A DNA stretch of 64,000 nt from Lytechinus pictus (Eukaryota). A model generated the notes under the pieces. The model worked only from the letters and a program-made list of their open reading frames with translations. It did not search any database and had not been told where the DNA came from. The position numbers and the translations under genes are program-made. Shown here in pieces: positions 433-64,000 of this stretch. The DNA lies in the NCBI RefSeq assembly GCF_037042905.1, contig NC_087246.1, positions 26,660,001 to 26,724,000 of the forward strand. Reading direction: 5' to 3'. The first letter of the stretch is position 1; each line of letters opens with the position of its first letter.

Positions 433-3260
433 ATTTGAATTTATTTATTACCAAATATATCACTGTCAGGTACAATTACAAGGAATAGTACATCACATAT
501 AAACAAAACATTTGGTAATTGGAGCTAACATAATAGCAAGATGTTAATCGAGGTTAGCCCCAAATAATGTAATTATTATAGTTTAAACAATAATTTTAAC
601 TAAATCTCAATATTGTACATCAAATTCAGTACTAATTCTACTTATTAATGTTGCAGAAATTTCGATCATTTTTAGTGAACATATTTACACTATTTACAAG
701 AAAAAAATATCTTAATTATTCACAAAATCTTTATATAGAATTATTTGTTTTCAGGCAGTATTTTGCCATACCAAATTAATTATAATCTTCCAGCTGCATT
801 AATTTTACCGATTTGCTAAATATCTTGCGACTGGGGGTGTTTCTAATATTACTTGGCAGATGATTTTATAAAGTAGGACCAGAAAATGAAATTGATTGTT
901 TTCCCAAATTGGTATTATTTTTGTCAAGGTTAACATTTCGCTTTTCTCTATTTCTTGTATTGTAAGGATGGTCTATAAATGAAAAATAATCAATAAAACT
1001 ATGCGGCAACCGATTATTGATTAAATCGTGCACAAATACTCCTAATATTGGTATTGTTTGAAAATATCGAGAATATTTAGATCATCAAATAAAGGAGCAG
1101 AGTGATAAGTATGATGGTTGAACGTCATTATTTTAGCTATTCTTAATTGAAGTAATAATATAGGGTTTAGGGTTGTTTTGCACGTCCCACCCCAAACTTC
1201 CATACCATACGTTATATGTGGTAAAATAAATGAGTTGTATTCAATTTTCAATTCTTTTATTTCATTTCCATTCAAAACATAATACAAAGTAATATAAAGT
1301 AATACAAATCAAGTACAAATTTACAGAATATGTATAACATAACTAAGATTCTCTTTGTTACATAATTCCTCAATATATAAAGTATTCCAATTTTTTTGCT
1401 TAGCACATTGCATACAATGTCAACCTGTTTCTTCCATGTAAGGTTTTTGTCGATACATATACCAAGAAATAATGTTGATTTCACACACTCTAGAGTTCCC
1501 TTCAGTGACATTGTCCTGATATTAAAACATTTTTCGTCTATTTTCAAACAACATATATTTAGTTTTCGTAACATTGATTGTCAAATTGCTGGCATTGCAC
1601 CATGCTATTATATTGTTTAAATTGAGACTAATTTCTGATAAATCAATATGTTGTTCATCACAATTGAAAGTATGAAATAAATTTGAGTCATCCGCAAAAA
1701 GACGGAAATTGAAATAATTTGATGAGTTTGCCAGATCGTTTATATACAACAAGAACAAAGTTGGACCCAAAACTTATCCTTGTGGAATACCGCATGAAAT
1801 CGACCTGTATTTGGAATTTGCACCATCATAATTAACAAATTGCTTTCTGTTTCGTAAATAACCATTAAACCATTTTACTGCTTTACCACGAATGCCATAG
1901 TGTTCTAGTTTCTTAATGAAAATAGAATGATTAATCGTATCAAAAGCTTTAGCAAACTCGATGAATATTCCTACTGTCACCTTTCCTTCATCAGGATATC
2001 TTGTAATTTGATTACTCAGATTTATCAGTGAAAGTTTCGTACTGTATCCTTTTCTAAAACCATATTGGTGTTTATACAATATTTCATTCTTTTCTATGAA
2101 TTTCATCAATCGTGCATTCACTAATTTTTCAAATATTTTGCTAATCGCGGGTAAAATCGATATTGGTCTATAATTTCCAGGTAATTCTTTATCTCCCTTT
2201 TTGAAAACTGGTGTAACTCTTGCAACTTTTAATTTATCTTGAAAAATGCCTGTGGTAAATGATAGATTGAATAAATGCGATAGAGGTTTGCAAATACAAT
2301 TCATATAGCATATATCAACAGTCGAACTGATATGTCATCATGGTCACTTACTTTAGATTGATCAAGAGTGTATAACATTTCTTTAACTCCTGAACTTGTT
2401 ATTGGCAGGAAGAAAAATGTTTGAATAATGTATTGACCCATGAACTCTCGGTAATTAACATTTGGCTCCTCAATTTTCTCAGCTAGATTTTCCCAATAGT
2501 AGAGAAATAATTGTTGAGTGAATTTACTATATCAACAGATGAAGTAATTTCGGAAGGTTCATTTTCTTGGTTAACAACTAATTTGTTAATTTTTTAATTC
2601 AGATTCGATCCACTATTTTTATTCAAAAGTTCATTGATATGACTCCAAGTTTTCTTTTAATCTTTTTTGTCTGCTTCAAACTTATGTTCACAATGCATTT
2701 GCTTTGCTTTCCTTTAGACGGTTTTTAACTGATTTCTGTATTTTTTATATTTATTCAAACAATCTTTATTATAATTTGATTTTATAACTTGAGAAAAAAG
2801 TTTGTGCTTTGTCGATATTGAACGCTTAATACATCATGTTATCCAGGGTTTATTTTTCTTTTTCTGTTTAACACATTTTGTCTCAATAGGAGCATGTTTA
2901 TTACAAACAAATAAGAACTGTCTTTGGAAAATATTATAAGCATCATTAGGCTCATACATTCTAAAACGCTTTTCCAAAAATCAGTAGTAACATGTAGATC
3001 ATTACAAAATGAATCGATTGAAAAGTTATGAAAGTTTCTCCGTGTTACACTATTTTTTCTTTGTTTAACACACTTGAAGTTCTTAAAAACGGAGTAAACT
3101 GGGAGATGGTCAGAAATATCTACTTCAATACACCCTGCTTGAATAGGATAAGCATATATATTCATTAGAACTTGTTATTCTTCATGTACTGTTCTTGTTG
3201 GACTTGTTATCAACTGACGTAAGCCATAACATTCTGTCATGCGAATAAAATCACGACATC
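433..3260 (-). mobile_element. Decayed, 5'-truncated non-LTR retrotransposon (L2/Crack/CR1 group), endonuclease C-terminus plus RT pseudogene
   Basis: Frameshifted ORF pieces 2839-3165 (DISDHLPV, APE C-terminus), 1774-2304 (NYRPISILP, QYGFRKG, AKAFDTINH, GIPQG), 1522-1770 (GPTLFLLYINDL, FADDS), 1272-1574 (FLGICIDKNLTW) and 1042-1287 (PHITYGMEVWG). AATAAA-rich tail near 435-450. Ends approximate. Confidence 0.9.
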
Positions 3261-18375: not shown

Positions 18376-19326
18376 ATGAGGATGTATACAGGCATCCTGT
18401 TACCATGGAAACACATCATATCACATGTGAGACCAGTGTTTCCAAAGAGATACTCATCTGGAGGGAGATCAACCAGGACTCCTTTCATCCAAGCAATCAA
18501 AGAGAGATATGGAGATCGAACAGCATTAGTTGACACTCATCAGACATACACTTATAGAGATATCTTAAGCTGGAGTATGGTTCTATCGAGACACATTCTC
18601 TCCAATACCAAAAGAGATGAAGCGCTTGCAAGGCGAGGGTCAAAGGTCATACTGAACGGTGAGAGAGTAGCATTCCTGTGTCCCAACGATGCATCGTATA
18701 CGATTACCCAATGGGGTGTTTGGATGAGCGGTGGGATGGCTGTTCCTCTATGCAAGTCACATCCAGAGTCGGAGTTAGAATACATCATCCAGGATTCGCA
18801 GAGCTCCCTGGTGGTAACAACTAAAGAATTCTCGCAGAAGATCATACCTATCGTTGAAAGACACATGATCAATTACATGGTTATAGACAATCAGGCTTTC
18901 CATACTCCAGAACAGGGTGATGGAGTTGATAGGGAAACTCGGGTCGGGGTACAGGAAGAGCCACTCCTGCAAAGAGAAGATGCTATTGGGGACAATCTTT
19001 CCATCATGACATTCAATCACCACACCGATGATTTAATCCCAATGAATAGCCTAACTGAGAAGTGGAAGCAAATACGTTGGAAGAATCGTGGCGCCATGCT
19101 GATCTACACGAGTGGTACGACAGGGCGACCCAAGGGTGTCTTGATGACCTTTGGTGCTCTTCAAGCTCAGATTCAGATGATGATATCAGCCTGGGATTGG
19201 ACGTCCAGTGATGTTATTCTTCATGTTTTGCCATTACATCATGTTCATGGTGTGGTTAATGTTTTAGCGTGTCCTCTATGGTCGGGTGCTACGTGTGTCA
19301 TGCTTCCCAACTTTGACGCAGAAAAG
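18376..19326 (+). CDS. ACSF3: Malonate--CoA ligase / acyl-CoA synthetase family member 3, coding exon 1
   Basis: Basic, acid-free N-terminus (mitochondrial presequence-like), AMP-binding motif IYTSGTTGRPKG, and ILHVLPLHHVHG. Acceptor at 18349-18350, donor AAG|gtaaca. Confidence 0.93.
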
Positions 19327-19871
19327 GTAACAATGATGTAGAATTCTTAAACAATTCTTTAAAGAGAAGGATCTCGCAAATGTCCTTGGAAGCCTTGTCT
19401 TGGATAAAGATTTGGCTTGTGTGAGATCTACATTAGGAGGACTTTCCTTAGGACTTTCCTTGTTATCTGTGCTTTTAAGAGTTTTCTCTTAATTTACTTA
19501 CTAATACTGTGTTGAGAATTCTATCTCTGAGGTGGACTTCTCCAGTACTCGTAAAATAATATTATCCCACTTTTTGATATCTCTAATACCTTGTAAAAAG
19601 CAATACAAGGAGAAAAAGGAGAATACAATGTTTTCAAGAATAGGAAATGGCATGAACAAATATATTTTAAGAATAGAATTTTTCAAGGTGTGATCAGTTT
19701 CGAGCACTTGTCATGAAGAAGACAACTATTTTGACAATAATTTTGACTATTTTTTCATTCTTGTTGGTGGTGATGCGCTATTTGTAATATATGTGCTTTA
19801 TAAAAAAAGCTACATATATTGTTTATCGCTAGTCAACCAATGTTTTCTTGTTTCGCTTCATTGTTTGACAG

Positions 19872-20026
19872 GTTTGGCAAATGCTCCTTGAAGACCATAC
19901 ACCTAGGGTGAATGTCTTCATGGCGGTACCTACTGTCTATGTCAAGCTTCTAGATTTCTATCAACTCAAGTACACCACGCCAAAGGTTCAAGCTTTCATT
20001 AGAGCAACATTGAAAGAAAAGATGAG
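19872..20026 (+). CDS. ACSF3: ACSF3 coding exon 2
   Basis: VWQMLLEDHTPRVNVFMAVPTVYVKLL...; canonical AG/GT. Confidence 0.92.
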
Positions 20027-20519
20027 GTAAGTTACCCCCCCAAAAAAAAAAAATGGAAGGATGATTTGAATAGATACCGGTAATGAATTTGAGGAAATCA
20101 AAGTCTGTAAATTTCAAACTGACCTTGTGAACTTCCAGAGTAGATGCTCTCTCTCATTCCCCTCAATTAAATGTAAATATCCAAACATAGTCCTGACAAT
20201 TAGAGTGTTGGTTGTACAGACAACAATCTCAATTATTCAATGATTTCAAGTTTTCGTGAAGTTTTTTGTGAATAATTTCAGTTAGTAATGGATTTAGATA
20301 GGAGGGGGAGGGGGGTTCATCTTTTTTTCCTGCACTCTCTATAGTTTGGTAAGTTTCTTTAATTATACTTCAAATCTATTTCCACTACATCCAAAATGTT
20401 TTGAGTGTTAATTCTTAAATTTACAGGAATGTTAGAACAACAATTGATATCATGTTATCTCAGCAATAAATGATTTTATTTTTGAGAGAATTATTAATAA
20501 TCTTGCAACTTTCTTTTAG

Positions 20520-20665
20520 ATTGATGGTGTCTGGTTCGGCTGCATTGCCTCAACCTATTATGGATGAATGGGAGAAAGTATCGGGTCATAGATTACTAGA
20601 AAGATACGGGATGACGGAACTTGGTATGGCTCTTACCAATCCACTCATCGGAGAAAGAAAACCAG
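20520..20665 (+). CDS. ACSF3: ACSF3 coding exon 3
   Basis: [11 protein letters not shown]...[14 protein letters not shown], the malonyl-CoA synthetase-type ERYGMTE motif. Confidence 0.93.
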
Positions 20666-21110
20666 GTAGCCGGGCTTCTAAGGAAGTTTGCTGATTGATG
20701 TCAGTTGATTTGATGAGTTGAAATATTTGGAAAAAGAGAGAAAAAGGAGGTTTCGGATTAGAGATTGACTTTATTCTTTGATTGATTTCCATCTCCTTAA
20801 AAGCAAAGATATTCATCATTCATTTTCTAAACTTGCATTTCCTTCTTTAAGAATAGACATATGTTCTGATTGTCGGATGGAATTGTGGAAACAACTGCCT
20901 CAGCTGATTTGGATATCTTTTAATGATAATGTCCCTAAGACTTATGTGGTGAGATTTTGGAATTGTGAAAATGATCTGAAATTTAATGGATTTTGTTGTG
21001 AATCACAGGCACTGCACTCATTGTTATCTGAACGAGTTTTCCCTTTTTTCAAATCTGAAAATGTTTCTCAATCATTTTAAATAGAATCATTGTAATTGTG
21101 TGTCTAACAG

Positions 21111-21329
21111 GTGCAGTAGGGAATCCCTTCCCAACCGTTGAGGTGCGAATCATGTCCTCCACCAACCAAGTCATTGCCAGGGGCAACTGCTTTCACAGTG
21201 AGGTCGTACCAGGGTTCGAAGGTCAACCGGGTGACCTGCAGGTCAAAGGTCCAGCTGTTTTCAAAGAATATTGGAATAGACCTGATGATACGAAGGACAG
21301 TTTTACTGACGATGGTTGGTTCATGACTG
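21111..21329 (+). CDS. ACSF3: ACSF3 coding exon 4
   Basis: GAVGNPFPTVEVRI...GDLQVKGPAVFKEYW...GWFMTG. Confidence 0.93.
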
Positions 21330-21983
21330 GTAAGTTTAATTGTTTTGTCACTGTCTCAATGAGTGCTCTTAAAGTCTATGTCAAGTTTTGGTTGGGTGCC
21401 TAGTCAAAAGGACTTTTTTCTTTTTGTGTTTTATATGATACTTCTTCTCAAGCATTGAGACTTTCAGGATATAATAATCTTTGTCTGTAACTTCCTGATA
21501 TCCAATCACTATATTTTTAAGATGCAGTTCAAAGTGCGATTTTCAAATAGAAATAAAGATATAACTGTGGTGTTACATACCTAAAAAAAAAAATTCAAAA
21601 TTTTACAAAGAATCAAGAAGTGAAAAAAAAAAAATGGCCACTATGCTTTTGTGATATTGGAATATTAGATGTTATAAATCACATAAATCACATTTGGACC
21701 CTTAACCATTTGAAGCTTTCTAAAGGTTTTAACGTATTGAATACCGTTTGATTTCAGTACAATGCACATTTTACTTATACTGTACTACTGCCTCAGTTAT
21801 CTTGGGCTTAGAGCTACATGAAGAAAATGAATTAACCTATTTTTGAATGAATAAGATTCTTTGATTTCTATTGTCATGATATGTATGATAATTTTCCCTC
21901 TAAATGTAAGTGAAAAAAAGATAACATAGGAATCCCAATTTATTGATGAATGAATGATTGTTTGATATTGCTGATTCAAACAG

Positions 21984-22351
21984 GAGACACGGCATGCTTG
22001 GATGATGGTGTGTTCAGGATCTTGGGAAGATCATCGGTGGATATCATCAAGTCCGGAGGCTACAAGATCAGCGCCCTCGATGTTGAAAGACATCTCCTCT
22101 CCCATCCCATGATCGCCGAGGTTGCTGTGGTAGGTCTCCCAGACATCACTTGGGGTCAGAGGGTCACTGCCATAGTAACGTTAAAGGCAGGTCAAAGGTT
22201 AAGTCTTGGAGAACTTAGGAATTGGGGGAAGGATAAGCTGCCATCGTATCAGATTCCTACAGAGTTGAAGATCATAGAGGAAATACCGAGGAACGCGATG
22301 GGGAAGGTTAATAAGAAGCAATTAGTATCTCAATTATTTGGGATTGAATGA
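21984..22351 (+). CDS. ACSF3: ACSF3 coding exon 5 (terminal)
   Basis: GDTA...ILGRSSVDIIKSGGYKISAL...PRNAMGKVNKK*. The five exons sum to 1839 nt (612 aa). Confidence 0.93.
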
Positions 22352-30107: not shown

Positions 30108-33100
30108 TTATCGCCTCTTTAAAGTATTCAGAATGATAGCCCACTTGCCATCATGTTTTTCTAATTTGCATTTCCTTTGTGCTATGGTATGTTCAACAGT
30201 TTCAAATGATAAAAGAAAGTTACAAAAATGGGAGAGAGTAGGTTTTGTTTCGTCACATCGACATCTAAAAATATATTGTTTACCTGACAGGAGCAGAAAG
30301 TTCAATATAAATATATATCTGGGAATTTGGGGCTTACAGATACCAAAAAGAACATATCTTTCTGAGAGGAAATCAGGAAGATCTAGTGAAGCAAAAAGTG
30401 TACCAACATTATTCCAAAATTGGTTAACAACATGGCAAGAATAAAAAAGATGCACTAGAGTTTCTGGTGATACTTTACAAAATGTACAAAGTGTATCAGT
30501 TACCTTGTTAATACGGAATAACCAAACCTTAGTAGGAATCAAATTATTAATAATCTTGAAATGTAAAGCTCGAAGTCTTGTATCTATAGTAGTACGTAGA
30601 GGTAGTTTTAAGAGTTCTCTTACTTCTTCTTGTTGAAACCCATAAGTGTCTTTTAAACGTGTAAATATATTCGAAATTGATGGGTTATTTTCATTCATAA
30701 AAAATGTGTAAAAAATATACTTTGGTACAACCGTTACTTCTCTAGTGATGCCATCAATAGTTAAAGTTGGAATCAATGAAATGTTGTCGACAATGGGATG
30801 AAAGTTTTGAGATAGAAAAAATACTTTCCATTTTGATGGCATAAACTTGTAACAATCAAGAAGCAAAAAGTATTCAACAAATGTTAAGCCTTTATTTTTG
30901 GCATCTTTCCATCTTAATGGTCTGCCATACTCATCCAACATATGTGACACTTTAACAAAACCTTTGTTTTTTATCTCTGGCTTATAAAAAGATTTTCCAT
31001 TTTGTAATATGCATCTATTATTCCATAGCATTTGGTTACATATTTTTATGTTTTTTTGAAATACTGTGCTCCAACTAACCATGACATCTTTATACCATTC
31101 AGGAATTGTCAGGTTTAAAATATTAAGATCATAATTACAATGGAATATAAAGTCACCACCTACATTTTGAAGCAGTGTTAGCAGGATAATCTTCCATCCC
31201 TTTGAATTGGATGTAAAAACTCTTTGTATCCACTTGACTTTTTGCACTTGTAGAAGAGATTTTAAGCATATCATTTTGAGCCCCCCATCTTCATACTGCT
31301 TAACAAGTATCTCCCTTTTGATCCTGTCAGGGCCGTTCCAAATGAACCCAAAAACTAACTTATTAACTTCTTTTATATAATAATCTGGGATTTTTGACAA
31401 ACTTGCAAGGTAAAGTAATTGCGAAAAGGCAAAGGTTTTGACAATTTGTATTTTGCCTATTAAAGATAAATGACGAGATTTCCATAAATTCAACTGTACT
31501 CTAATTTTATCAAGTGTTCTTTGCAATTGTAAAGAAAAAACATTGGGTGAATAAGCTATATCTACCCCAAGAATTGTCAAAGACTTCTCAAACTGGATAT
31601 TCTCTAGTGAATGTTGATTATCTTTACAGGCTCCTATCCACATTGCCTTTGTTTTGAAAATATTGATAGAGAGTGATGATTCCTTTCGGAAATTCTGAAG
31701 TGTATTCAAAAGGTGTCTAAATGAAATATTGTCTGAAAGGAAAACCGTTATGTCGTCCGCATACAGCGACAATTTCAATTCTAAATTGTCCGATATTTTT
31801 AAACCATGTATTGTCTTGTTTTCACGAATATTTATGGCAAATGTCTCTATAGCTAAAACAAATAAATAAGGACTCAATGGGTCTCCCTGCCTAACACCTC
31901 TTTCAACGGGAAAATAACCCGATGACAGACCCCGATTCATTACCGCACTTTCTAAATTGGTATATAAAACTTTAATAAAGTTACAAAATCCTTCTCCAAA
32001 ATTGAATGATCGGAGGACGTTTAACAAAAAAGAATGGTCTAGTGAATCGAATGCCTTTTGGAAATCCAAACTTAATAATATTCCGGGAATATTTTTCAAG
32101 TCGGAAAAGAAAAGAGCATCTTTAACTGTCCTGACAGCTTCTCCAATAAATCTGTCCTTTATAAATGCTACCTGATCTGGGTGAATCAAATCAGGCAGAA
32201 CTTTCTTTAATCTTTCTGCAAGAGCTTTAGAACCAATTTTCAAATCAACATTCACTAGAGTGATGGGTCGGTAATTTTCGATTAACATTTTGTCTTTCCC
32301 TTTCTTTGATATGAGTGTAATTAAACCTTGTCTTTGTGAACTAGAAAGTTGACCTTGTTGAAAACTGTAGTTAAGATTATCTACCAAAAGCTGTCCAATT
32401 TTACCCCAGAACTTGCGATAGAACTCAACCGTTAGACCGTCGTTTCCCGGTGACTTGTTTTTTGACATAAGTAATAGGGATGATGTACATTCCTCTAACG
32501 TTAACGGCAAGTCACATTTACTCTTGGAGTCCGAGGGTAATTTTGGAATATTTTCTTGTCCTAAGAATAAGGAGTTTTGCCTCGAGTCGACATTAGGCTT
32601 TTTATATAATTGTGTATAGAATGATTTTATTTCTGAATTAATATTTTTCATATCTGTAAGTATACAATCGCCTTGCTTAAGTTTAAAAATTGACGATTTA
32701 TTTTTGTGGCCTTTTTCTAAGTTAAGAAAAAATTTAGTATTTTTCTCCCCAAATTCCATCCAATTTGCTTTAGACCTTAATATGATGCCTTGTGTTATAT
32801 AATCTAAATAAGACTCATATTCTCTTTCAATCTTTTTATATTCCTCAGCATGCCTTTCACCCTCGGAATCCAACAGAAATTGCAACCTTTTTAGCCTGTT
32901 TTCCAGTTCTCTTCGCCTTTCTTTCCTTTTCCGTGCCTTTTCAATACTGTATTTACGTGAAAATAGGCGAATATTATACTTGAGAAATTCCCAACCTATT
33001 CTCATATCATCAAATTGTGAAATATCTTTAATCCACAGATCTAAATTTTTCGTCATTTCAGAACAAAACACTTCATCCTCGCATAGGGTGTTATTAAATT

Positions 33101-33881
33101 TCCAATTCATAGCATTACATCTTGTTTCTTCTTGTACTTTAAATTCTAAAATAATAGCCAAATGATCAGAACCCACTCCGGGTATCATATCTACCTTGCT
33201 AATATAATCCTGCAGGGTCTCGGAGACAAACCAAATATCTAATCTACTTTGGATTAAAGGCCGCAATTGTTTCCAAGTATATTTACGCGTAATGGGGTTA
33301 CGTACACGCCATATATCAATGACATCTAAATCACTCTGTAATTTTTTAAGTTGACTGATTACTGCCTGCGAGGTTGTTGGATGACCACCTTGTCTGTCAA
33401 CATTCATGTTTAAAATCACATTAAAATCGCCCCCAATTAATAGAGGAGTAGTCGCAATATCATCAAAAGAATTTAAGGTACATAATAAATGGTCAAAAAA
33501 TATTTTTTGTTCACGTTTCTTATCAGCTGTTGGTGCATAAACGTTACAAATTATAAATTCATTGCCGTCTATAATAATTCTTAAAACCAAATATCTACCA
33601 TTACCTGAAACATGTTTAGAAATGATTTTATAATCTAGTTTTGAATTGATAAGTATCATGACCCCACTACTATGAGGAGATCCGTGACAAAAGAGTACAT
33701 CACTGCCCCATTCCGAAGACCAACTACTTTCTACGTCTTCTGAACTATATGTTTCTTGTAGGAGAGCAATGTCGATTTCTTTTTCTCGTAACCAACCAAA
33801 TACCTTTTGCCTCCGAAACCCTGATCTTAGACCTCTCACATTCAAAGACAAAAACTTCATGCTCGTTTCTTTAAAACCCAT
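30108..33881 (-). CDS. L1/Tx1 ORF2: APE endonuclease, reverse transcriptase and C-terminal Cys/His finger
   Basis: 1257 aa uninterrupted. EN motifs NVRGL, LQET, GGDFN, SRLD, SDH. RT motifs SPGNDG, DFQKAFD, GVRQGDPLSP, YADD. C-terminal CTFC..ETLVHLFYSC. Confidence 0.96.
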   Translation of the reverse strand: MGFKETSMKFLSLNVRGLRSGFRRQKVFGWLREKEIDIALLQETYSSEDVESSWSSEWGSDVLFCHGSPHSSGVMILINSKLDYKIISKHVSGNGRYLVLRIIIDGNEFIICNVYAPTADKKREQKIFFDHLLCTLNSFDDIATTPLLIGGDFNVILNMNVDRQGGHPTTSQAVISQLKKLQSDLDVIDIWRVRNPITRKYTWKQLRPLIQSRLDIWFVSETLQDYISKVDMIPGVGSDHLAIILEFKVQEETRCNAMNWKFNNTLCEDEVFCSEMTKNLDLWIKDISQFDDMRIGWEFLKYNIRLFSRKYSIEKARKRKERRRELENRLKRLQFLLDSEGERHAEEYKKIEREYESYLDYITQGIILRSKANWMEFGEKNTKFFLNLEKGHKNKSSIFKLKQGDCILTDMKNINSEIKSFYTQLYKKPNVDSRQNSLFLGQENIPKLPSDSKSKCDLPLTLEECTSSLLLMSKNKSPGNDGLTVEFYRKFWGKIGQLLVDNLNYSFQQGQLSSSQRQGLITLISKKGKDKMLIENYRPITLVNVDLKIGSKALAERLKKVLPDLIHPDQVAFIKDRFIGEAVRTVKDALFFSDLKNIPGILLSLDFQKAFDSLDHSFLLNVLRSFNFGEGFCNFIKVLYTNLESAVMNRGLSSGYFPVERGVRQGDPLSPYLFVLAIETFAINIRENKTIHGLKISDNLELKLSLYADDITVFLSDNISFRHLLNTLQNFRKESSLSINIFKTKAMWIGACKDNQHSLENIQFEKSLTILGVDIAYSPNVFSLQLQRTLDKIRVQLNLWKSRHLSLIGKIQIVKTFAFSQLLYLASLSKIPDYYIKEVNKLVFGFIWNGPDRIKREILVKQYEDGGLKMICLKSLLQVQKVKWIQRVFTSNSKGWKIILLTLLQNVGGDFIFHCNYDLNILNLTIPEWYKDVMVSWSTVFQKNIKICNQMLWNNRCILQNGKSFYKPEIKNKGFVKVSHMLDEYGRPLRWKDAKNKGLTFVEYFLLLDCYKFMPSKWKVFFLSQNFHPIVDNISLIPTLTIDGITREVTVVPKYIFYTFFMNENNPSISNIFTRLKDTYGFQQEEVRELLKLPLRTTIDTRLRALHFKIINNLIPTKVWLFRINKVTDTLCTFCKVSPETLVHLFYSCHVVNQFWNNVGTLFASLDLPDFLSERYVLFGICKPQIPRYIFILNFLLLSGKQYIFRCRCDETKPTLSHFCNFLLSFETVEHTIAQRKCKLEKHDGKWAIILNTLKRR

Positions 33882-34621
33882 AGCAAGGTATCATATCTGT
33901 AACTTTGATATACATGTACCAATCCACAAACACATAACCGTGCATCCTACATGTACATGTACTTATGACAGGTGTCAGATGTATTGCTTTGGCTTGCACC
34001 TGTAACATATAGAAGCCTAAATATAACTTTCCACTGTTGCAAACACCATTCCTCAGTACCGTTACTATAAAGGCTAATGTAAATTTCAAAATTGTACATT
34101 GAGCAACTGCCCTAACAGTAGTTGTTTTCCAACACTTGGAATTTGTTTTGCTTTCAGCTGACGCAAGAGAACTATAAAAAGAACATCTTTGGCAAAGGCA
34201 AACTATGTACATAGAAACAATATACAAAGAAAATTTAAATGTGTAACACTTGTACACGAACAAATACATTAATAAATGTGAAAAAATTAAGACACGTCTG
34301 ACTGATCGAATGCTAGACATGAGGAACATGTCAAAGACATGAAACCTTAAAGGAGCTAACAAACCCACCCTTTAACATGTTTACAAAATTCACGAATATT
34401 ACTGGAGGGAGAAACCACAATGGTCAATGTGGCAGAAAAAAAAATAAAAAATTCTATTCAATGCAGTATATAGGGCAAATAAATATCAGTATCAAAACAA
34501 CTGATCAAAAGTTGTGTGTTCATTTCCAATGTCAATAGCACTTTGCGTTCAATAAAATAAATGAACTTGAATTTTGTTCTCTGTAATTGTAAATGAAATG
34601 AAGATCGAGAATGCAAGACCG

Positions 34622-35515
34622 CTATTCTTTATGTATTTCCCATTTCTGGGTTCCTTTTTCTCTGTAGAAGAGGACCACTTTCGCTCTAACAACCGTTATT
34701 TTAGTAGACAGCTTCTTTTCTTTTCTCAACTTGTATGCAACTTTGGCCAACTCACTGCGTGTTGCCTTCAGTGCTGGAGGCAAGTCTGTTCTCACTGTAA
34801 GCCTAGATGTTTCTTGTGTAACAGGTGGGTATCTCCATTCGACTCCTGTGGTGTTTCCAGTCGAAGCATCTGTGGCGACTCTCTTCTTGTAAGCTCGCTC
34901 TTCGAACGCAGCTAAGACTCGATTACGTTGTGACATATAGACAAACTTGGCTATGATAGGATGGGGGACACCTTCTTGTGAGTGGCGTTGGGGTAGCCTA
35001 TGCACATTGATAAGGCAAACGGCCTCCGCTTCCTCTTTGCTCAAACCAAGTAGAGTAAAAACATGGCGAATCACGACATAGACATTTTCTCCTTGCTCCA
35101 TTTTGACCCCGTAGAATAAGAGATTATTCTTCCTCTGGTATATCTCTGATTCGATGAGCTTTGTACGAAGTTGATCAACCTCCTTCCTTAGGTCGCTTTC
35201 AATCTGAGGAAGCTTCTCTTTCTCGATAATGTCGACCTTCGATGCATTAAAATCAACTGCTGCTTCTAAGTCATCCACTTTCGTCTTGATCTGATCCAAA
35301 TTGTGTTGTAAACCATCTAATTTTGCACAGACTCTAACTTCAGATTCCCGTATAGAGCGCATAACATCTGCGAGCGTGAATGCACTCTCCGGTTCACCCG
35401 TGCCCTCCGGCGTTGGTGTACTGGTTTGTGCCGTTGACGTTGACGGTGTAGATTGTTTGGTGCGTTGGCCCTCGGACGACATGGTTGCACTCCTTAAGAA
35501 ATAAGACTTTTCCAT
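34622..35515 (-). CDS. L1/Tx1 ORF1 (coiled coil plus RRM-like nucleic-acid chaperone)
   Basis: 297 aa; heptad-rich region followed by RKNNLLFYGV, VHRL, PIIAKF and DLP motifs typical of L1-type ORF1p. Confidence 0.9.
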   Translation of the reverse strand: MEKSYFLRSATMSSEGQRTKQSTPSTSTAQTSTPTPEGTGEPESAFTLADVMRSIRESEVRVCAKLDGLQHNLDQIKTKVDDLEAAVDFNASKVDIIEKEKLPQIESDLRKEVDQLRTKLIESEIYQRKNNLLFYGVKMEQGENVYVVIRHVFTLLGLSKEEAEAVCLINVHRLPQRHSQEGVPHPIIAKFVYMSQRNRVLAAFEERAYKKRVATDASTGNTTGVEWRYPPVTQETSRLTVRTDLPPALKATRSELAKVAYKLRKEKKLSTKITVVRAKVVLFYREKGTQKWEIHKE

Positions 35516-37149: not shown

Positions 37150-37455
37150 CTTGTCAAATTTCCAACGGGTAAAATGTGCCACCCCTTTTTAAAAATCCTA
37201 GATCCTGTAGCATCCCGTAAAATTTCAACTCTGGATCCGCACCTGATGAATATAGTTAACTGAAAATTAGTTCATTTGTTCTTTTATATATTTATATGTG
37301 AACTATTTCAGTACAAGATGTAAACAAGCATTTAATATATATATATATATATACACCCAAAACAGAGATGGCCAAGGTACCTGAATAATCATAGCTTGGA
37401 GCCCAATGAGCACCAACAGCAATTATAAAGCTCCTGATAACAGGAGAGATCTTAC

Positions 37456-37681
37456 CTTGCTCCCAAAGTAATCCAGAAGCATCTTATCCTGAGCCTTTCT
37501 GTATGGATCACTTGGCCATAAGTTGCCATGATCAGGGTAAGCATCATTTACGTATTCACAGACAAGGGTAGAATCTCTCACAATCTTCTCATCATGTTCA
37601 AAGCATGGGGTAGTTCCAAAGGGATTCTTTGAGAAGTACCATTCTGGTTTCTTAGTGAGGCTTATGTTGACCAATTCATAG
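37456..37681 (-). CDS. GSTO1: GSTO exon 3
   Basis: YELVNISLTKKPEWYFSKNPFGTTPCFEH...DPYRKAQDKMLLDYFGSK|gtaag. Confidence 0.93.
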
Positions 37682-39224
37682 CTGGAAAGAAAACCCAATG
37701 CAATTTGACATTCTGGGTCCCGTAACACAAAGGTTAGCAATTGATCGTATGCTTGATTTTTTTCAATTGATTGTACATTGTAGTCAATGGAATCAGTCAT
37801 AGAAAAATGTTCTACGATCATTGCTAAGTTTTGTTATGGGCCCCTGGTGTAATCCAAATATCTTACACTACAGGTTCATTTTGTTTGATATTCAAAATAT
37901 CAACTTGGAATACTCAGTCACAGGTTATTTCTCAATGTCAAGTCTACTCCAACAAAGAGCATGATGAATAAAAAGGAAAAAATACCAATTACCATAACTT
38001 TAATAGTATCACCATGTATAAAGTCATTTTAATATATTGTTTTATTTCATTTCTTTGTCAATTTTCAACATACAAATCAGAAATACAGATCAACGTTCAA
38101 TGAGATTTGACAATTTGATTATATTTTTAGTGTTATGCTTGTCTGACTTTTCTATATTTGTTTACATCATTATCAACTTGTTTTCCATTGAATTAATATA
38201 AACAAAACTCTTGAAATGAAGAATGATTTATAAGACTACAACTGAAAAACTCTATTCATATATACCAATGTTTTCAATCTATTTTTTTCAATAACACAGA
38301 TATGTTCATTTCAGGCACAGGTACTGTACATAGATTAGATGTATATGAACATTGTTGGTTAACAGAGTTGCTGGGGTATGCTGTTCTTAAATCTCTCTAA
38401 TGCAAGTAAAAAGAAGATTTGATTTATCTATTAATATTATCAAACCAATATGTGATACATATAAAATAAATCTTCTTTTTACTTGCATTAGAGAGAATTG
38501 TTGCTGGAATAGTGCCACAAATGTCCCCTGACAGTTTCATGGCTCAAGTTTACACTGTAATTATTCATTTTATTTAATATCCATCTATATAAATACAATA
38601 CAATATTTAATTACTCTAACATACTTTAATCATAGTTTGGAATTATAAGTATCTTCTTGATTACAGACTTCAAATTTTAGGCACTAGCTTGCTTATTGCT
38701 CATCATGTCTACACATGTATCATATTCACAATGAAATCCAACAATTAACAATTCAACTGAATGGAAAGAAAAATGTTACATGTTTTCAGAACAGTATTCT
38801 GAATTCATGAAGCAACAATGTATACATTGTCATCATTTTCAAAACACATCCTAAGAGGCTCTGAAATAGATATTCAGATACACATGTTTTATAGTACAAT
38901 ATCTTAATACCAAGTATGACTCTAAAATTTTGTGTGAGATAGATATCACAATCTAGTTCAGGTATAAATTGGTGAAATGCTAATTGATGAAAAAAGACCC
39001 TCTAATTCGTACACATCACATAATCTCACTGATTTCAATCATTTCACTCCCCAAAATTTAGTGATATACATGTAGATCCAAAGTCTACTAAAGTTTTATA
39101 CTTTTGATGTATGTTGCAAATGCTAGACATTAAAAAAATCATGAAATACTTTCACTGCTTATTAAATATCGTAAACTGAAACTGTGGATATGACTAAATA
39201 AAAGTGGATATGAATAATGCATAC

Positions 39225-49022: not shown

Positions 49023-51400
49023 TAAAAAATGAGAGGTGATGAGGGTTACAGTGATGTGTGTTAGTTGTGATGGCACGAGTGGGTTAAACTTACAAGTACA
49101 ACACTGACAAGGGTTACGACTCACTAATTCACGAATGTGTTACCGACGGTACAAGAACAGTGACAACAACTTATACTTACCTGACACTTGTACAGACGAT
49201 TCCACACGGTAGATACACTCCGGTAACATACGACTTCTAATAACAGCTAGGTTGCAGACCATGGCGCCGAGTGGGGAGCTACTGGGATGTCCTCACTCGA
49301 TGGCGTCTCGGGGTCTTTTTTCTGTGGTGTCTGGATCCAATCTCTCTCATACTGCCCAGGCACCAACTTGTGTACGTGCTGTGCAACGCACACACGTAGC
49401 AGGCGTAGGAGCATATCAAGGCTGCTCCAATCAGAGCGCTCCTCGCATGCACATAGCACACACACAGACTTAATATACATGAACATAGATCAATACATAG
49501 ACTAATACACAAACTAATACATATAGGGTACTACAGGTACATGGCAAATTTACTACATTCCTCCCGGTTCCATCAGATTGCGACATATATTGACAAATCC
49601 ATGAATTGGCTATATTGTGCAATCTCAATAGATAAAACAGATATGAAGAACTCTGACAGAAGAATGTAATATATGCCTATATGATTAAAACTGATTAAAT
49701 ACATGACATCAATAAAATACCTCAGATACCGTACATAAAAAGTGTGATCTGAGGACATAGAATTATTCAATAACAATTGTTCATTTAAAAAAGATTGCTG
49801 GTCCAGCAAAATTAAATCTCTTATCACTCGAGACCAGCAAATATATACTTGGAGAAACAAGAACAAGCTAATGGTAAGTAATCCGGCCAGTCTGGCCCAG
49901 TCTTGTCTATGTACTGATACAAAAAATATCAGTGTTTTATATTACCGGTAAGTTGTATATTGTTATTAAAGGAATGACAATTAAAGCAATAAAGCCTACC
50001 GGTATTTGGCTGGAGCTCTACTACCAATATAGGCCTGTACAATGTGACCTTTACAAATATGATGATTGGTAATATGTTTGTGCTCTTAAAAAGCATGTAC
50101 ATGTAAGGATATTTCAACCAGATCTGGTGCAAATAAATATAACAACCTGGACTTGAAATACATACATAGTATTTTCCCTTGAGAAAAAACTACTACTATT
50201 TCAACATCCTGTATGACAATATTTCCAGGGTTGTTTATAAAGCCTTTGCAAACAAGGGAAAATATCTACGGTATATCTTATATATAAATATAAAAGAGCT
50301 ATCTATTGCCTAAACAGAGTTTGCACCTCTAGAGATAAAAGCTATTGAAAATAAGAGGTGTGCCTTCACCTTCTTGATTGTGTTCATGAAAGAAATTATA
50401 TTGTATAACAGAAATTTCAATTGCCGGACTTTCAGCAACTGATCAAGGAGGTACTTCTCCATTCTTGAGGTGGTGGCCAGGGAGGAAGGAGCCACAGACA
50501 AGATAAATGGAATTGGCCGTTACTTAAACTACAGACATACCTCTGGTTCCACCAGAAAAGAGAAGTGAGGAATTCAAGGATGGACAGCTTAGGAGGGGTA
50601 CTTCCCCAAAGCAATTGCTCAAGATAACTCTGCCCATGCTTGGTATCCTCAGTAGAGGCTCGACTGTCTTCTGACACAGTTACAAGACTTACATTATCTA
50701 CACCTATGGTATTTACTGTAACATTACTTACACATGTAGTATTTACAGTTACATTATCTACACATGTGGTATTTACAGTTACATCATCTACACTTAAGAT
50801 ATCTACATGTTTTACTGCTAAACGTTCTGGACAGTTCCTCTTAAAGTGTCCAGATTTGTTGCATGCAAAACAAACATCACGACAAGACAACTGGGATTCA
50901 TTGTCTTCTGTCGAAGGAGAATGTGTATGCCTATTCAGCTCTGGGACAGCAGTTTGATCTGGATTCACACTGAGTATAAGATGGTTTGGAATCCTCACTA
51001 GTATAGGGAGTACCAGGAGCATATCTAGAGTGATCAGTATATTGTGAATGTCTATCCTGATCAACGTTGGAAGAACCATATGACCTATGACCAAAATTCC
51101 TGGAACAATCTCCATAATGATCAGTCCTAGAATAACAAGATGCATCAGGATGCAAATTATCAGCCTGAGGCTTTCTACCAGTATTGGGTTCAGCATATTT
51201 ATATTGGCATTTATCAGCACATTTATATACAAGATCTGTTAAATCGAGATCAGATAAATAATATATCCTTGAACAATCAAACCTCTCATAAACAAATTCA
51301 TCTACAAAATTTCTTGGATAACCAAGCTTGTACAGATTATTTGCCAGTGAATAATCATATAAGTATCCATTACTAGTATTACGACTGTCTATAATGTCTT
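49023..51400 (-). mobile_element. LTR-retrotransposon remnant (gag-like CCHC knuckle, PPT plus partial LTR)
   Basis: CFACNKSGHFKRNC zinc knuckle in ORF 50432-51232. On the minus strand a purine tract GGGAGGAA is followed directly by TGTAGTA at 49557, as expected for a PPT-LTR junction. No pol seen. Confidence 0.55.
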
Positions 51401-62079: not shown

Positions 62080-62163
62080 CGGGGGCGTCGATCCATTTTT
62101 CAGATTGGGGGGGCAAAATCATTAACGTTCCAAAGGCGCTCGATCGTACAAAACACCCACCCG

Positions 62164-62230
<67 letters not shown>

Positions 62231-62820
62231 CTCATGAGACACAGACACGTATCTCACTACACAGATAGTACGAGTGCCGAGAGTGAGCTCAAATTTCTTT
62301 ATATTCTGAGCTGAAAACTTGATATTCTAAGCATTTTTGGTACCAATGATTAAGATTTGTATCTAAAAGAAGAATAGATGCGAGCGCAAAGCGCGAGCTG
62401 AAAATTTTGATATTTCGATCTGAAAAAATGACAGTTTACTGGACGTTTTTGATAAAGAACAAGCTATAAGAAAAGATGATTGCAAATTGAAGCAGTTCTT
62501 TTGAGGCTTAGAACTGAAAACGGGACATTTACATTCACCAATTTAATCATGAAAAGTATGGGTTTTTGCTACAGAAATGATGCGAGCGCGAAGCGCGAGC
62601 TAAAAATCTTTATATTCCAATCTGAAAAGCGGACATTTTGAGCACGATTTTAAATAAAGAACGAGTTGTGTATCTCAATCTCGCTTGCTGAACATTACAA
62701 TCTTGTTTTTTTTTATGCATATCCGGAATTATTGGGGGGGCAAAATGATATGTTTGCCCCCCAATATTTTCATTGGTGGGGCGATCGCCCCCCCCTGCCC
62801 CCCCAGGATCGACGCCTCTG
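62080..62820. mobile_element. hAT-like MITE with internal (CA)n(TA)n microsatellite
   Basis: TIR CGGGGGCGTCGATCC / GGATCGACGCCTCTG; 8-bp TSD GTAAAAGT at 62072-62079 and 62821-62828. Confidence 0.85.
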
Positions 62821-63449
62821 GTAAAAGTGTAAATGAAAAACGACTCTGCAATATTTACATCTTCATTTATACCAAGGTGTTCAATACAAACGAGCTAATT
62901 CAGCGTTGATAAATTAAAAAAAAATCACTATGAATAAAAAAGACGTAAACAAACTACACTGTTCATAGTTCCATGCGGTCAAACATCGTTCTGCCGATGG
63001 TTGCACGGATGAGCGGGATGAGTTTAGGTATGAGTCTTCCGTTTTCTTACATTTCGATGCACAAGCGTGGTTCGATCAAGAAAAAGTTTTGGATCTTTTC
63101 AAGAAGAATGGTTATGAAGTTGGCGTCAAAATAGGCTGGGGTTGTTGTAGGAGAAATGTCTTTTACCGCGGGGATCTCCTTCCATCTCTTGACAAGATTT
63201 TCCCGCTCAAAACCTACATGTACGTCTAGCTGAGATGCGGCTTAAATGACGTACATTTCTTTTTCGTGCGCTTCGCCGTCTAAACAAGGATGTGTCTTAA
63301 AAGACCCACTACGTAATCACCGACTCTGTTTCCTAAATATGAAAAGAGATAAAAAAAGAATAATTACAAATGTAGATTATCATACAAACAACGACAATAA
63401 CAAATGAATGAAAAAATAAAAAGAAAGAAGAAAGATTCTCTGATTGTTA

Positions 63450-63489
63450 TCTTTCTTGGTAGTAGGGTGGCTCTTAAAAGAGCCTTTGG
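63450..63489 (-). promoter_or_regulatory. Replication-dependent histone-type 3'-end processing signal (SLBP stem-loop plus U7-binding downstream element)
   Basis: Minus strand reads CCAAA-GGCTCT-TTTA-AGAGCC-ACCC-TACTAC-CAAGAAAGA: a 6-bp stem with 4-nt loop, consensus flanks, and the sea-urchin HDE after a 6-nt spacer. Confidence 0.88.
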
Positions 63490-63834
63490 ATTGATTGCTG
63501 GTAAATCTCTATAGATTGATTGCCACGCACCCATCTTCTAGCGTGAGGTATATGGTTTTTGCAACGGTTGGCTGGGTTGGAGCTTCAGCAGGCATTGGGG
63601 TGGGTCCTTCAAGAAATTCGCAGCCTCTTCCACCTCAGTAGGTTCTGAACCCATGGCTACATTTCTATTTCATAATCCTTTCCCGGGTAGTGCAGATGGA
63701 AAACATTGACAATATTGACACCAGCCATCTTGGTATAGCGATGGCAGCAAAATTCCCCCACCTCTTGTTGAACGATTTCCATTTTATAATCCTTTCCGGG
63801 TTGTGCAGAGGGAAAACATCGACAATATTGACAC

Positions 63835-64000
63835 CACCACGTCGTCATCGGGTTGAGAAGACCCTGGTTGCGTTAGCATCACCACGTCGTCATCGGGTTG
63901 AGAAGACCCTGGTTGCGTTAGCATCACCACGTCGTCATCGGGTTGAGAAGACCCTGGTTGCGTTAGCATCACCACGTCGTCATCGGGTTGAGAAGGCTCT
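63835..64000. repeat. 45-bp perfect tandem repeat (at least 3.6 copies, may continue beyond the window)
   Basis: Unit CACCACGTCGTCATCGGGTTGAGAAGACCCTGGTTGCGTTAGCAT; the open minus-strand frame gives (VMLTQPGSSQPDDDV)n. Confidence 0.95.

What the first reader, a model, noticed from the sequence alone, without database searches (positions are those of the whole stretch)
63450..63660. Complete histone mRNA 3'-processing cassette attached to a non-histone reading frame
Seen: the minus strand reads ...KTIYLTLEDGCVAINL-TAG (stop at 63509-63511), then 24 nt ending in CCAAA, then GGCTCTTTTAAGAGCC ACCC, a 6-nt spacer and CAAGAAAGA. Established: this is the SLBP stem-loop plus the U7 snRNA-pairing element of replication-dependent histone genes. 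It has the sea-urchin HDE sequence and spacing and the typically short 3' UTR, and such ends are considered essentially histone-exclusive in animals. Seen: I recognise no H1/H2A/H2B/H3/H4 sequence in the 500 nt upstream. The frame there is Pro/Glu-rich (MGSEPTEVEEAANFLKDP / MPAEAPTQPTVAK.., one frameshift apart). Inference: a mobile element or endogenous virus gene may have co-opted the SLBP/U7 pathway for non-polyadenylated, S-phase- or egg-coupled expression. This copy looks degraded. A captured fragment of an orphon histone gene is the mundane alternative.
Basis: partly seen in the sequence, partly recalled or inferred. Interest (0 to 1): 0.85.

Follow-up and report, generated by a model that had tools for sequence, protein, structure and literature searches.

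The report
Orphan histone mRNA 3'-end signal
A sequence-perfect histone-type mRNA end signal (hairpin plus U7-pairing element) sits in repeat-rich DNA with no histone gene and no convincing reading frame in front of it, so it is most likely a stray copy of the signal, although transposon genes found elsewhere during this check do end in the same signal.

Summary
On the minus strand, 63445-63489 is the only Rfam hit in the window (Histone3, 37.1 bits, E 3e-7). It has the canonical flanks, a 6-bp stem, a 4-nt loop and a purine-rich CAAGAAAGA element 10 nt after the stem.

None of the 516 nt visible upstream resembles a histone by Pfam or PDB searches. But "attached to a reading frame" is not supported:
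- The 28- and 38-aa frames are no longer than shuffled sequence gives (p about 0.12).
- They have no homologues or domains.
- They sit behind a 45-bp minisatellite and a 113-nt duplication.
- No mobile-element or virus gene is visible, and no second copy exists in the window.

My best reading (0.5) is an orphan, DNA-level copy of the signal in non-coding DNA. The retained U7-pairing element excludes a retro-copy of a mature histone mRNA.

All three unrelated loci that pattern scans of public contigs returned with this type of cassette also lack a histone gene. One is a PIF/Harbinger transposase whose stop lies 22 nt before a 41.9-bit histone stem-loop.

The source genome beyond 64000, and its real histone genes, could not be reached. 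The origin therefore remains open.

The parts
63445..63489 (-). Whole histone-type 3'-processing cassette as matched by Rfam Histone3 (RF00032)
   Evidence: 37.1 bits, gathering 34, E 3.3e-7, model positions 1-46. E 1e-8 in the last 2 kb.
63469..63484 (-). 16-nt stem-loop with a 6-bp stem and a 4-nt loop. It is flanked by CCAAA (63485-63489) and ACCC (63465-63468). The expected cleavage is 5 nt after the stem, between 63464 and 63463.
   Evidence: the hairpin is in both the MFE and centroid folds. The cleavage position follows the rule stated in bioRxiv 10.64898/2026.10.14.759114 and is an inference.
63450..63458 (-). Purine-rich histone downstream element CAAGAAAGA, 10 nt after the stem. It contains AAAGA, the complement of the conserved UCUUU box of U7 snRNA.
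   Evidence: for the sequence. The U7 UCUUU box is from PMC5054213. That this is the echinoid consensus rests on my own knowledge.
63509..63654 (-). They are treated here as chance frames.
   Evidence: No Pfam or PDB hit. Not on record as a product. Length is within chance.
63484..63523 (-). Micro-duplication: a 15-nt direct repeat (87% identical, sharing an exact 10-nt core), start-to-start spacing 25 nt. The second copy runs straight into the hairpin's 5' flank.
   Evidence: family D9.
63661..63836 (-). Two copies of a roughly 63-nt unit (about 90% identical, spacing 113-114 nt, so not frame-preserving). The upstream copy carries TATAAAA at 63782-63788; the downstream copy has a mutated version.
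   Evidence: D3, D4; 90.5% over 63 nt.
63835..64000 (.). 45-bp tandem repeat, at least 3.6 nearly identical copies, running into the window edge. One sense frame stays open through it, which is expected by chance for a 15-codon unit.
   Evidence: (D1). HMMER against 1.84 billion representatives found only low-complexity matches.
63292..63307 (-). Possible second, decayed stem-loop 177 nt downstream in the same orientation (3 mismatches in 16). It is not a Histone3 hit.
   Evidence: 0.33 such matches expected per window, so about 1e-3 within 200 nt on this strand. (D5, 17/21); no Rfam hit at E<=10; no flank similarity.

Best explanation
This is an orphan ('solo') copy of the replication-dependent histone pre-mRNA 3'-processing signal, lying in non-coding, duplication-prone DNA of an animal genome.

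It was copied at the DNA level. The source was either the 3' flank of a histone gene or another unit that already carried the signal. It lost its coding partner through local rearrangement, or never had one here. The short frames in front of it are chance frames.

[quoted passage not shown] It could then be cut about 5 nt after the stem, near 63464, giving a non-polyadenylated end. Nothing in the sequence shows that such a transcript exists or encodes a protein.
For: - The cassette is real and complete.
- The downstream element lies beyond the cleavage site and is absent from mature histone mRNA. Its presence means the copy came from DNA or from unprocessed RNA, not from reverse transcription of a mature message. 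No A-rich tail or AATAAA follows it.
- No histone profile or PDB match was found for the upstream sense frames.
- The upstream frames are no longer than chance.
- No exact product is on record and no homologue was found.
- The putative 296-nt transcript body shows no excess RNA structure (z = +0.69).
- The surroundings are a stack of local duplications: a 45-bp array, a 113-nt duplication, a 25-nt micro-duplication and perhaps a second decayed hairpin. This is the kind of place where fragments get shuffled.
- There is no other Histone3 hit in 64 kb, so this is not the edge of a histone cluster extending downstream.
- No protein domains lie in 52-64 kb.
- Background: sea-urchin-type genomes hold large histone arrays plus dispersed single copies (PMC13525598), so stray fragments are expected.
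Against: - Every defining position of the roughly 45-nt signal is intact, although the neighbouring duplicated units have already diverged by about 10%. This fits recent origin but also fits selection for function.
- A TATAAAA lies about 300 nt upstream in the sense orientation. That gives a compact, histone-gene-sized unit.
- All three unrelated external loci retrieved with this type of cassette also lack a histone gene, and carry ORFs longer than chance or a transposase. Non-histone use of the signal may therefore be real biology.
- I could not show homology of the hairpin flanks to a true histone gene, because no histone gene of this genome was reachable.
- Everything upstream of 64000 is unseen.
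Confidence: 0.5

Rival explanations
1. The cassette is the 3' end of a gene of a mobile element, or of a degraded or non-autonomous derivative. The element's body lies beyond position 64000 or has been replaced by the tandem repeats. The element would use SLBP/U7 processing to tie its expression to S phase or to the egg.
For: A precedent was found here. In L004-L016, a PIF/Harbinger-type DDE_Tnp_4 ORF (E 6.7e-30) stops 22 nt before a 41.9-bit Histone3 stem-loop. That locus shares the window's exact 25-mer and has a convergent BESS-motif ORF.

L003 has dense short palindromic repeats upstream of a CCAAT/TATA promoter, a small ORF and the cassette. The window shows the same order of parts: repeats, TATA, short frames, cassette.

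A possible second decayed cassette 177 nt away has unrelated flanks. That fits repeated arrival better than a single tandem duplication.
Against: - No transposase, reverse transcriptase, polymerase, integrase or capsid domain lies in the 516 nt upstream or in 52-64 kb downstream.
- tblastn of the L004 proteins against the whole window finds nothing.
- No second copy or inverted partner of 62800-63660 exists in the window.
- IMG/VR gave no cassette. The one loose hit there is a chance match inside a phage ORF.
- If a Harbinger-like transposase ended here, part of its catalytic domain should fall inside the visible 516 nt. It does not.
Confidence: 0.25
2. This is a small host transcription unit, coding for a micro-protein or non-coding. 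It would run from the TATAAAA at 63782-63788 to the cassette (about 290 nt) and be processed like a histone mRNA.
For: - Sense-strand TATAAAA sits about 300 nt upstream.
- Two ATGs lie in good initiation context, by my reading.
- One frame stops 24 nt before the stem and another 53 nt before it. This is close to the 23-31 nt typical and 25-60 nt permitted distances quoted in bioRxiv 10.64898/2026.10.14.759114.
- The cassette is perfectly intact.
- L002 and L003 are compact units of similar size with non-histone ORFs (126 and 89 aa; p = 0.002 and 0.024 against shuffles).
Against: - The frames are within chance length.
- No homologue, domain or record exists for them.
- There is no RNA-structure signal.
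- The promoter-like unit is itself a duplicated repeat.
- In the L002 family, variable codons are 13 non-synonymous against 2 synonymous. Even that ORF shows no purifying selection.
Confidence: 0.15
3. This is the 3' end of a true histone or histone-variant gene whose coding sequence lies more than 516 nt upstream. That would require a very long 3' UTR or an intron.
For: Only that the upstream sequence is cut off at 64000.
Against: Histone stem-loops lie 23-60 nt after the stop, and that distance matters for regulation. The intervening 516 nt is made of tandem and dispersed repeats. No convincing splice acceptor precedes the short frames, by my reading.
Confidence: 0.05
4. The hairpin and purine run resemble a histone signal by chance.
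For: None beyond the small size of the motif.
Against: The Rfam E-value is 3.3e-7 for the window, above the curated threshold. The exact 16-mer occurs once, and looser matches are expected only 0.33 times per window. The downstream element is independently in place.
Confidence: 0.01

Closest known systems
3' end of replication-dependent histone genes (SLBP stem-loop, Rfam RF00032, plus the U7-pairing histone downstream element)
   Same: It has the same 26-nt core with CCAAA and ACCC flanks, a 6-bp stem with G-C at the second pair, and a U-rich 4-nt loop. A purine-rich element containing AAAGA sits at the normal distance.
   Different: No histone coding sequence ends 23-60 nt upstream, and none is detectable in the 516 nt that can be seen.
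Histone orphons and dispersed single histone genes of sea urchins, and fragments of them
   Same: It is an isolated histone-derived sequence away from any cluster. No other Histone3 hit exists in 64 kb. Dispersed copies are documented for sea urchins (PMC13525598).
   Different: Orphons as described are whole genes. Here only the roughly 45-nt processing signal is recognisable. Homology of the flanks to a histone gene's spacer was not testable.
PIF/Harbinger DNA transposons (DDE_Tnp_4 transposase plus a second DNA-binding protein), as seen in loci L004-L016
   Same: A non-histone ORF is followed at histone-like distance (22 nt) by a canonical stem-loop with the window's exact 25-mer.
   Different: The window has no transposase or BESS/Myb-like ORF, and the flanks share nothing beyond 28 nt of cassette. 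The 12 external contigs are near-identical assemblies from one set of host-associated samples. They count as one observation, and whether it is an active element or a domesticated gene is unknown. No paper in the library links Harbinger with a histone stem-loop or SLBP.

Membership tests
Histone 3' UTR stem-loop (Rfam RF00032) | Covariance-model score at or above the curated gathering threshold over the full model | tested here: met
   37.1 bits against 34, model positions 1-46/46.
Histone 3' UTR stem-loop (Rfam RF00032) | 6-bp stem with G-C at the second pair, 4-nt loop with U at the first and third positions, A-rich 5' flank and ACC 3' flank | tested here: met
   Read directly. The criteria are as stated in bioRxiv 10.64898/2026.10.14.759114.
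U7-dependent histone processing signal | Purine-rich downstream element complementary to the U7 5' region (AAAGA against the UCUUU box), a short distance after the cleavage site | tested here: met
   CAAGAAAGA at 63450-63458, 10 nt after the stem. The UCUUU box is from PMC5054213. Pairing to this species' own U7 was not testable, because no U7 gene is in the window.
Replication-dependent histone gene, including orphon or pseudogene | Histone-fold or H1 coding sequence ending about 23-60 nt upstream of the stem-loop | tested here: not met
   There are no Pfam histone families in any stop-to-stop sense-frame piece of 63490-64000, and no PDB chain for the two frames nearest the hairpin. A nucleotide comparison with a histone gene of the same genome could not be made.
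Functional histone-type mRNA end | A transcript that actually ends 4-5 nt after the stem and binds SLBP | not testable with these tools
   No expression data are available here.
Mobile element or endogenous virus (Polinton/Maverick, adintovirus, PIF/Harbinger or other) | Hallmark protein domains (transposase or integrase, polymerase, capsid, reverse transcriptase) in the same unit | tested here: not met
   None is found in the 516 nt upstream or in 52-64 kb. The nearest retroelement ORFs, at 30-35 kb and 50-51 kb, are unrelated units. Sequence beyond 64000 is unseen, so this covers the visible side only.
Mobile element or endogenous virus | Multiple copies, terminal repeats or target-site duplications | tested here: inconclusive
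   No second copy or inverted partner exists within the window. No copy was found in IMG/VR, JGI metagenomes or GTDB genomes. The source genome itself could not be searched.
Retro-copy of a mature histone mRNA | The copy ends at the cleavage site, so the downstream element is absent | tested here: not met
   The downstream element is present and contiguous, and no A-rich tail follows.

The most novel reading that the evidence does not exclude
The window's cassette may be a member, possibly decayed, of an undescribed class. In this class, non-histone transcription units end in a canonical histone stem-loop and U7 element, borrowing the S-phase or maternal control of histone mRNA.

The evidence does not exclude this. 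All three unrelated cassette-bearing loci that the public-contig scans returned are non-histone:
- a PIF/Harbinger DDE_Tnp_4 transposase (L004-L016)
- a 126-aa ORF recurring in four marine metagenome contigs (L002, L017-L019)
- an 89-aa ORF behind a CCAAT/TATA promoter (L003)

For a cut-and-paste transposon, S-phase-limited transposase mRNA would be a plausible advantage. That last point is my inference.
Probability: 0.3. Interest if true: 0.85.

Novelty: new variant of a known kind. Interest (0 to 1): 0.5.

Why it matters
Replication-dependent histone mRNAs are described as the only cellular mRNAs that end in the stem-loop instead of poly(A) (PMC4604434 abstract; PMC5054213). An intact signal with no histone gene is either genomic debris or a hint that other units use the pathway.

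If it is debris, it is useful mainly as a caution for annotation pipelines that call histone genes from RF00032 hits. If other units do use the pathway, the transposase example found in passing matters more than the window locus. It would mean that selfish elements can plug into histone-mRNA control. That can be tested directly with existing poly(A)-independent RNA data.

Tried and rejected
1. **Copies of the cassette in public collections.** The strict pattern (25-mer, 6 N, downstream element) gave 0 hits in IMG/VR and 0 in JGI metagenomes. The loose pattern gave 0 in IMG/VR and 0 in GTDB genomes. A loose hairpin-only pattern in IMG/VR gave one hit, which is a chance match inside a phage ORF.

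2. **Protein routes to other genomic copies or to sequence beyond 64000.**
   - Exact look-ups of the 63-aa and 38-aa frames and of the LINE ORF were not on record.
   - A word-indexed search with the 56-aa frame spanning the hairpin found no candidates.
   - An exhaustive HMMER search with the 71-aa tandem-repeat frame found only low-complexity look-alikes.
   - The last homologue search, with the L003 ORF, found nothing.

3. **Identifying the organism.** I used the ACSF3-like exon. The best hit was 84% identity to an unnamed short-read contig, and the next was 48%. The test 'do the hairpin flanks match a real histone 3' UTR' was therefore not run.

4. **Structured non-coding RNA between the TATA and the hairpin.** Rejected (z = +0.69).

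5. **Tandem duplication as the source of the second hairpin-like site.** There is no flank similarity, and it is not an Rfam hit.

6. **Similarity of the window's frames or flanks to L002, L003 or L004.** There is none beyond the cassette.

7. **A convergent plus-strand ORF at 62969-63226.** No family was found.

8. **Literature.** No paper in the library describes a histone stem-loop on a transposon gene or on a sea-urchin non-histone gene. The old sea-urchin U7 papers were not held.

- I also once wrote the two short frames one after the other as a single string.

I stopped when I noticed.

Full report
**What is there**

I read 62800-64000 on the minus strand. It runs as follows:
- a stop TAG at 63509-63511
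- 24 nt ending in CCAAA
- the 16-nt hairpin at 63469-63484
- ACCC
- a 6-nt spacer
- CAAGAAAGA at 63450-63458

Rfam's Histone3 model (RF00032) matches 63445-63489(-) end to end at 37.1 bits. The curated threshold is 34 and the E-value is 3.3e-7 for the window. It is the only Rfam family above threshold in all 64 kb. In the last 2 kb the E-value is 1e-8. The hairpin appears in both the minimum-energy and centroid folds. The exact 16-mer occurs once in the window.

The purine element contains AAAGA, the complement of the UCUUU box that a U7 survey calls universally conserved (PMC5054213). A recent preprint gives three rules: the stem-loop normally sits 23-31 nt after the stop, 25-60 nt to the conserved 26-mer is tolerated, and cleavage falls five nucleotides after the stem (10.64898/2026.10.14.759114). 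By that rule the predicted end is at about 63464.

**What is upstream**

The window ends at 64000, so only 516 nt can be seen. Their layout is as follows:
- A 45-bp unit is repeated at least 3.6 times with near-perfect identity, up to the window edge.
- Two copies of a roughly 63-nt unit lie 113-114 nt apart at about 90% identity. The first carries TATAAAA at 63782-63788.
- A 15-nt direct repeat (87% identical, 10-nt exact core) recurs 25 nt apart, and its second copy leads into the hairpin (D9).

Every stop-to-stop piece of the three sense frames was scanned against Pfam at E<=10. The two frames nearest the hairpin were also run against all PDB sequences. No histone, and nothing else, came back.

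The frames are not longer than chance. In 5000 shuffles of the 516 nt, 11.6% had an ATG frame of 38 aa or more ending 15-80 nt before the stem. A frame of 63 aa or more somewhere occurred in 13.7%. One frame stays open through the 45-bp array. That is expected for a 15-codon unit repeated exactly. An exhaustive HMMER search of 1.84 billion representatives found only unrelated low-complexity proteins. The 296 nt between the TATA-proximal region and the cleavage site fold no better than shuffles (z = +0.69).

So the statement 'no histone gene here' stands, but 'a reading frame is attached' does not.

**Context**

The window is animal DNA with 35.5% G+C. It contains:
- an ACSF3-like acyl-CoA ligase gene (AMP-binding domains at 18376-19338 and 21950-22348)
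- a GST N-terminal exon at 37426-37821
- an intact-looking LINE ORF with endonuclease and reverse transcriptase domains at 30111-33881(-)
- a zinc-knuckle ORF at 50435-51232(-)

Between 52 kb and the cassette no ORF has a Pfam domain. Nothing in 62800-63660 recurs elsewhere in the window on either strand. There is no other histone stem-loop. The cassette is therefore not the first unit of a histone cluster extending downstream.

A site 177 nt downstream, in the same orientation, matches the hairpin at 13 of 16 positions and 17 of 21 with its 3' flank. About 0.33 such matches are expected per window. One this close therefore has a chance of roughly 1e-3. However, it is not an Rfam hit and its flanks share nothing with those of the intact cassette. 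I record it as a possible decayed second copy.

**Origin**

The downstream element lies beyond the cleavage site and is not part of mature histone mRNA. Because it is present and contiguous, and no A-rich tail follows, the cassette was not made by reverse transcription of a mature histone message. It was copied as DNA or from an unprocessed transcript.

The local stack of duplications shows a region where short segments are readily copied. Sea-urchin-type genomes carry large histone arrays plus dispersed single genes (PMC13525598), so stray fragments are plausible. That the CAAGAAAGA form is the echinoid consensus is my own knowledge. I could not confirm the species. The ACSF3-like exon's best match was an unnamed short-read contig at 84% identity.

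**Related sequences elsewhere**

No copy of this cassette with its spacing exists in IMG/VR or in the JGI metagenome contigs. A looser pattern allowed either stem variant and 3-16 nt before CAAGAAAG. It found nothing in IMG/VR or GTDB genomes and two metagenome contigs, L002 and L003. Both are Histone3 hits, at 39.5 and 38.6 bits. They share 42 nt of cassette at 95% identity, with a compensatory stem change, and nothing else. Neither has a histone gene.

L002 has a 126-aa acidic and proline-rich ORF that stops about 20 nt before the stem. L003 has two CCAAT boxes, a TATA box, an 89-aa ORF and then the cassette about 100 nt after the stop. Neither ORF has a Pfam or PDB relative. Both are longer than shuffles allow (p = 0.002 and 0.024).

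The L002 ORF recurs in three more contigs from other samples at about 99% identity, with the cassette invariant. Its variable codons are 13 non-synonymous against 2 synonymous. This gives no sign of purifying selection.

Searching GTDB genomes with the window's exact 25-mer gave one contig, L004. It is binned into a spirochaete MAG but is evidently eukaryotic host DNA. There, a 293-aa ORF with a PIF/Harbinger-type DDE_Tnp_4 domain (E 6.7e-30) stops 22 nt before a 41.9-bit Histone3 stem-loop. A convergent ORF carries a BESS motif. The identical or near-identical ORF and stem-loop recur in 11 further contigs from the same group of samples. I count these as one observation.

The library holds no paper that links Harbinger elements with histone stem-loops or SLBP.

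**What this means for the window**

All three unrelated external loci with this kind of cassette are non-histone, and one is a transposase. It does not tie this locus to it:
- The window has no Harbinger-like sequence.
- It has no hallmark domain.
- It has no second copy of the region.
- It shares no flank similarity with the external loci.
- If a transposase of the L004 kind ended here, part of its catalytic domain would fall inside the visible 516 nt. Repeats are there instead.

**Verdict**

| Reading | Confidence |
|---|---|
| Orphan DNA-level copy of the histone processing signal in non-coding, duplication-prone DNA, intact enough to work if transcribed | 0.5 |
| End of a mobile-element gene or its degraded derivative | 0.25 |
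| Small host transcription unit using histone-type processing | 0.15 |
| Distant true histone gene | 0.05 |
| Chance | 0.01 |

The decisive data are descriptive and outside these tools:
- the same assembly beyond 64000
- a genome-wide census of RF00032 hits with and without histone ORFs
- flank comparison with the species' real histone genes
- poly(A)-independent RNA data for an end at about 63464

I also once wrote the two short frames as one string.

Noticed in passing
L004:935-1884 (also L005-L016): A PIF/Harbinger-type DDE_Tnp_4 transposase ORF (293 aa) stops 22 nt before a canonical histone stem-loop (Rfam 41.9 bits) that shares the window's exact 25-mer. A convergent ORF has a BESS motif. 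It sits on a contig binned into a Brevinema MAG that looks like host DNA, and it recurs in 12 contigs of one sample series. No paper in the library describes it.
   Followed up: partly
L002:391-826 (-), with L017, L018, L019: A 126-aa acidic and proline-rich ORF is followed about 20 nt later by a Histone3 stem-loop and CAAGAAAG element. It occurs in four marine metagenome contigs at about 99% identity. The cassette and UTRs are invariant, while the ORF holds 13 non-synonymous against 2 synonymous variable codons. The organism is unknown.
   Followed up: partly
L003:44-670 (-): This is a compact unit with two CCAAT boxes, a TATA box, a (CAAG)n leader, an 89-aa ORF with no relatives and then a Histone3 stem-loop (38.6 bits). 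Dense short palindromic repeats lie upstream. It shares only the 42-nt cassette with L002.
   Followed up: partly
window 63292-63307 (-): A hairpin-like site 177 nt downstream of the cassette matches it at 13/16 (17/21 with the 3' flank). It may be a decayed second copy. It is not an Rfam hit and its flanks are unrelated.
   Followed up: yes
window 62104-62765: A segment of about 660 nt is bounded by 16-nt inverted copies of an ATTGGGGGGGCAAAAT-type motif. It contains a (CA)n(TA)n microsatellite and two copies of a roughly 200-nt unit, which also occurs near 11.2, 12.1 and 47.4 kb. It looks like a small non-autonomous element.
   Followed up: no
window 30111-35515 (-): A long uninterrupted LINE ORF (1257 aa; endonuclease, reverse transcriptase and zf-RVT domains) has a 297-aa ORF just upstream. 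A second reverse-transcriptase fragment lies at 1777-2304(-).
   Followed up: partly
window 18376-22348 (+) and 37426-37821 (-): There are host gene exons here: an ACSF3-like malonyl-CoA ligase (AMP-binding and AMP-binding_C domains) and a glutathione S-transferase N-terminal domain. The closest ACSF3 match is an unnamed short-read contig at 84% identity.
   Followed up: partly
window 50435-51232 (-): A 266-aa ORF with a CCHC zinc knuckle and a short valine/threonine-rich repeat is probably a retroelement gag remnant.
   Followed up: no
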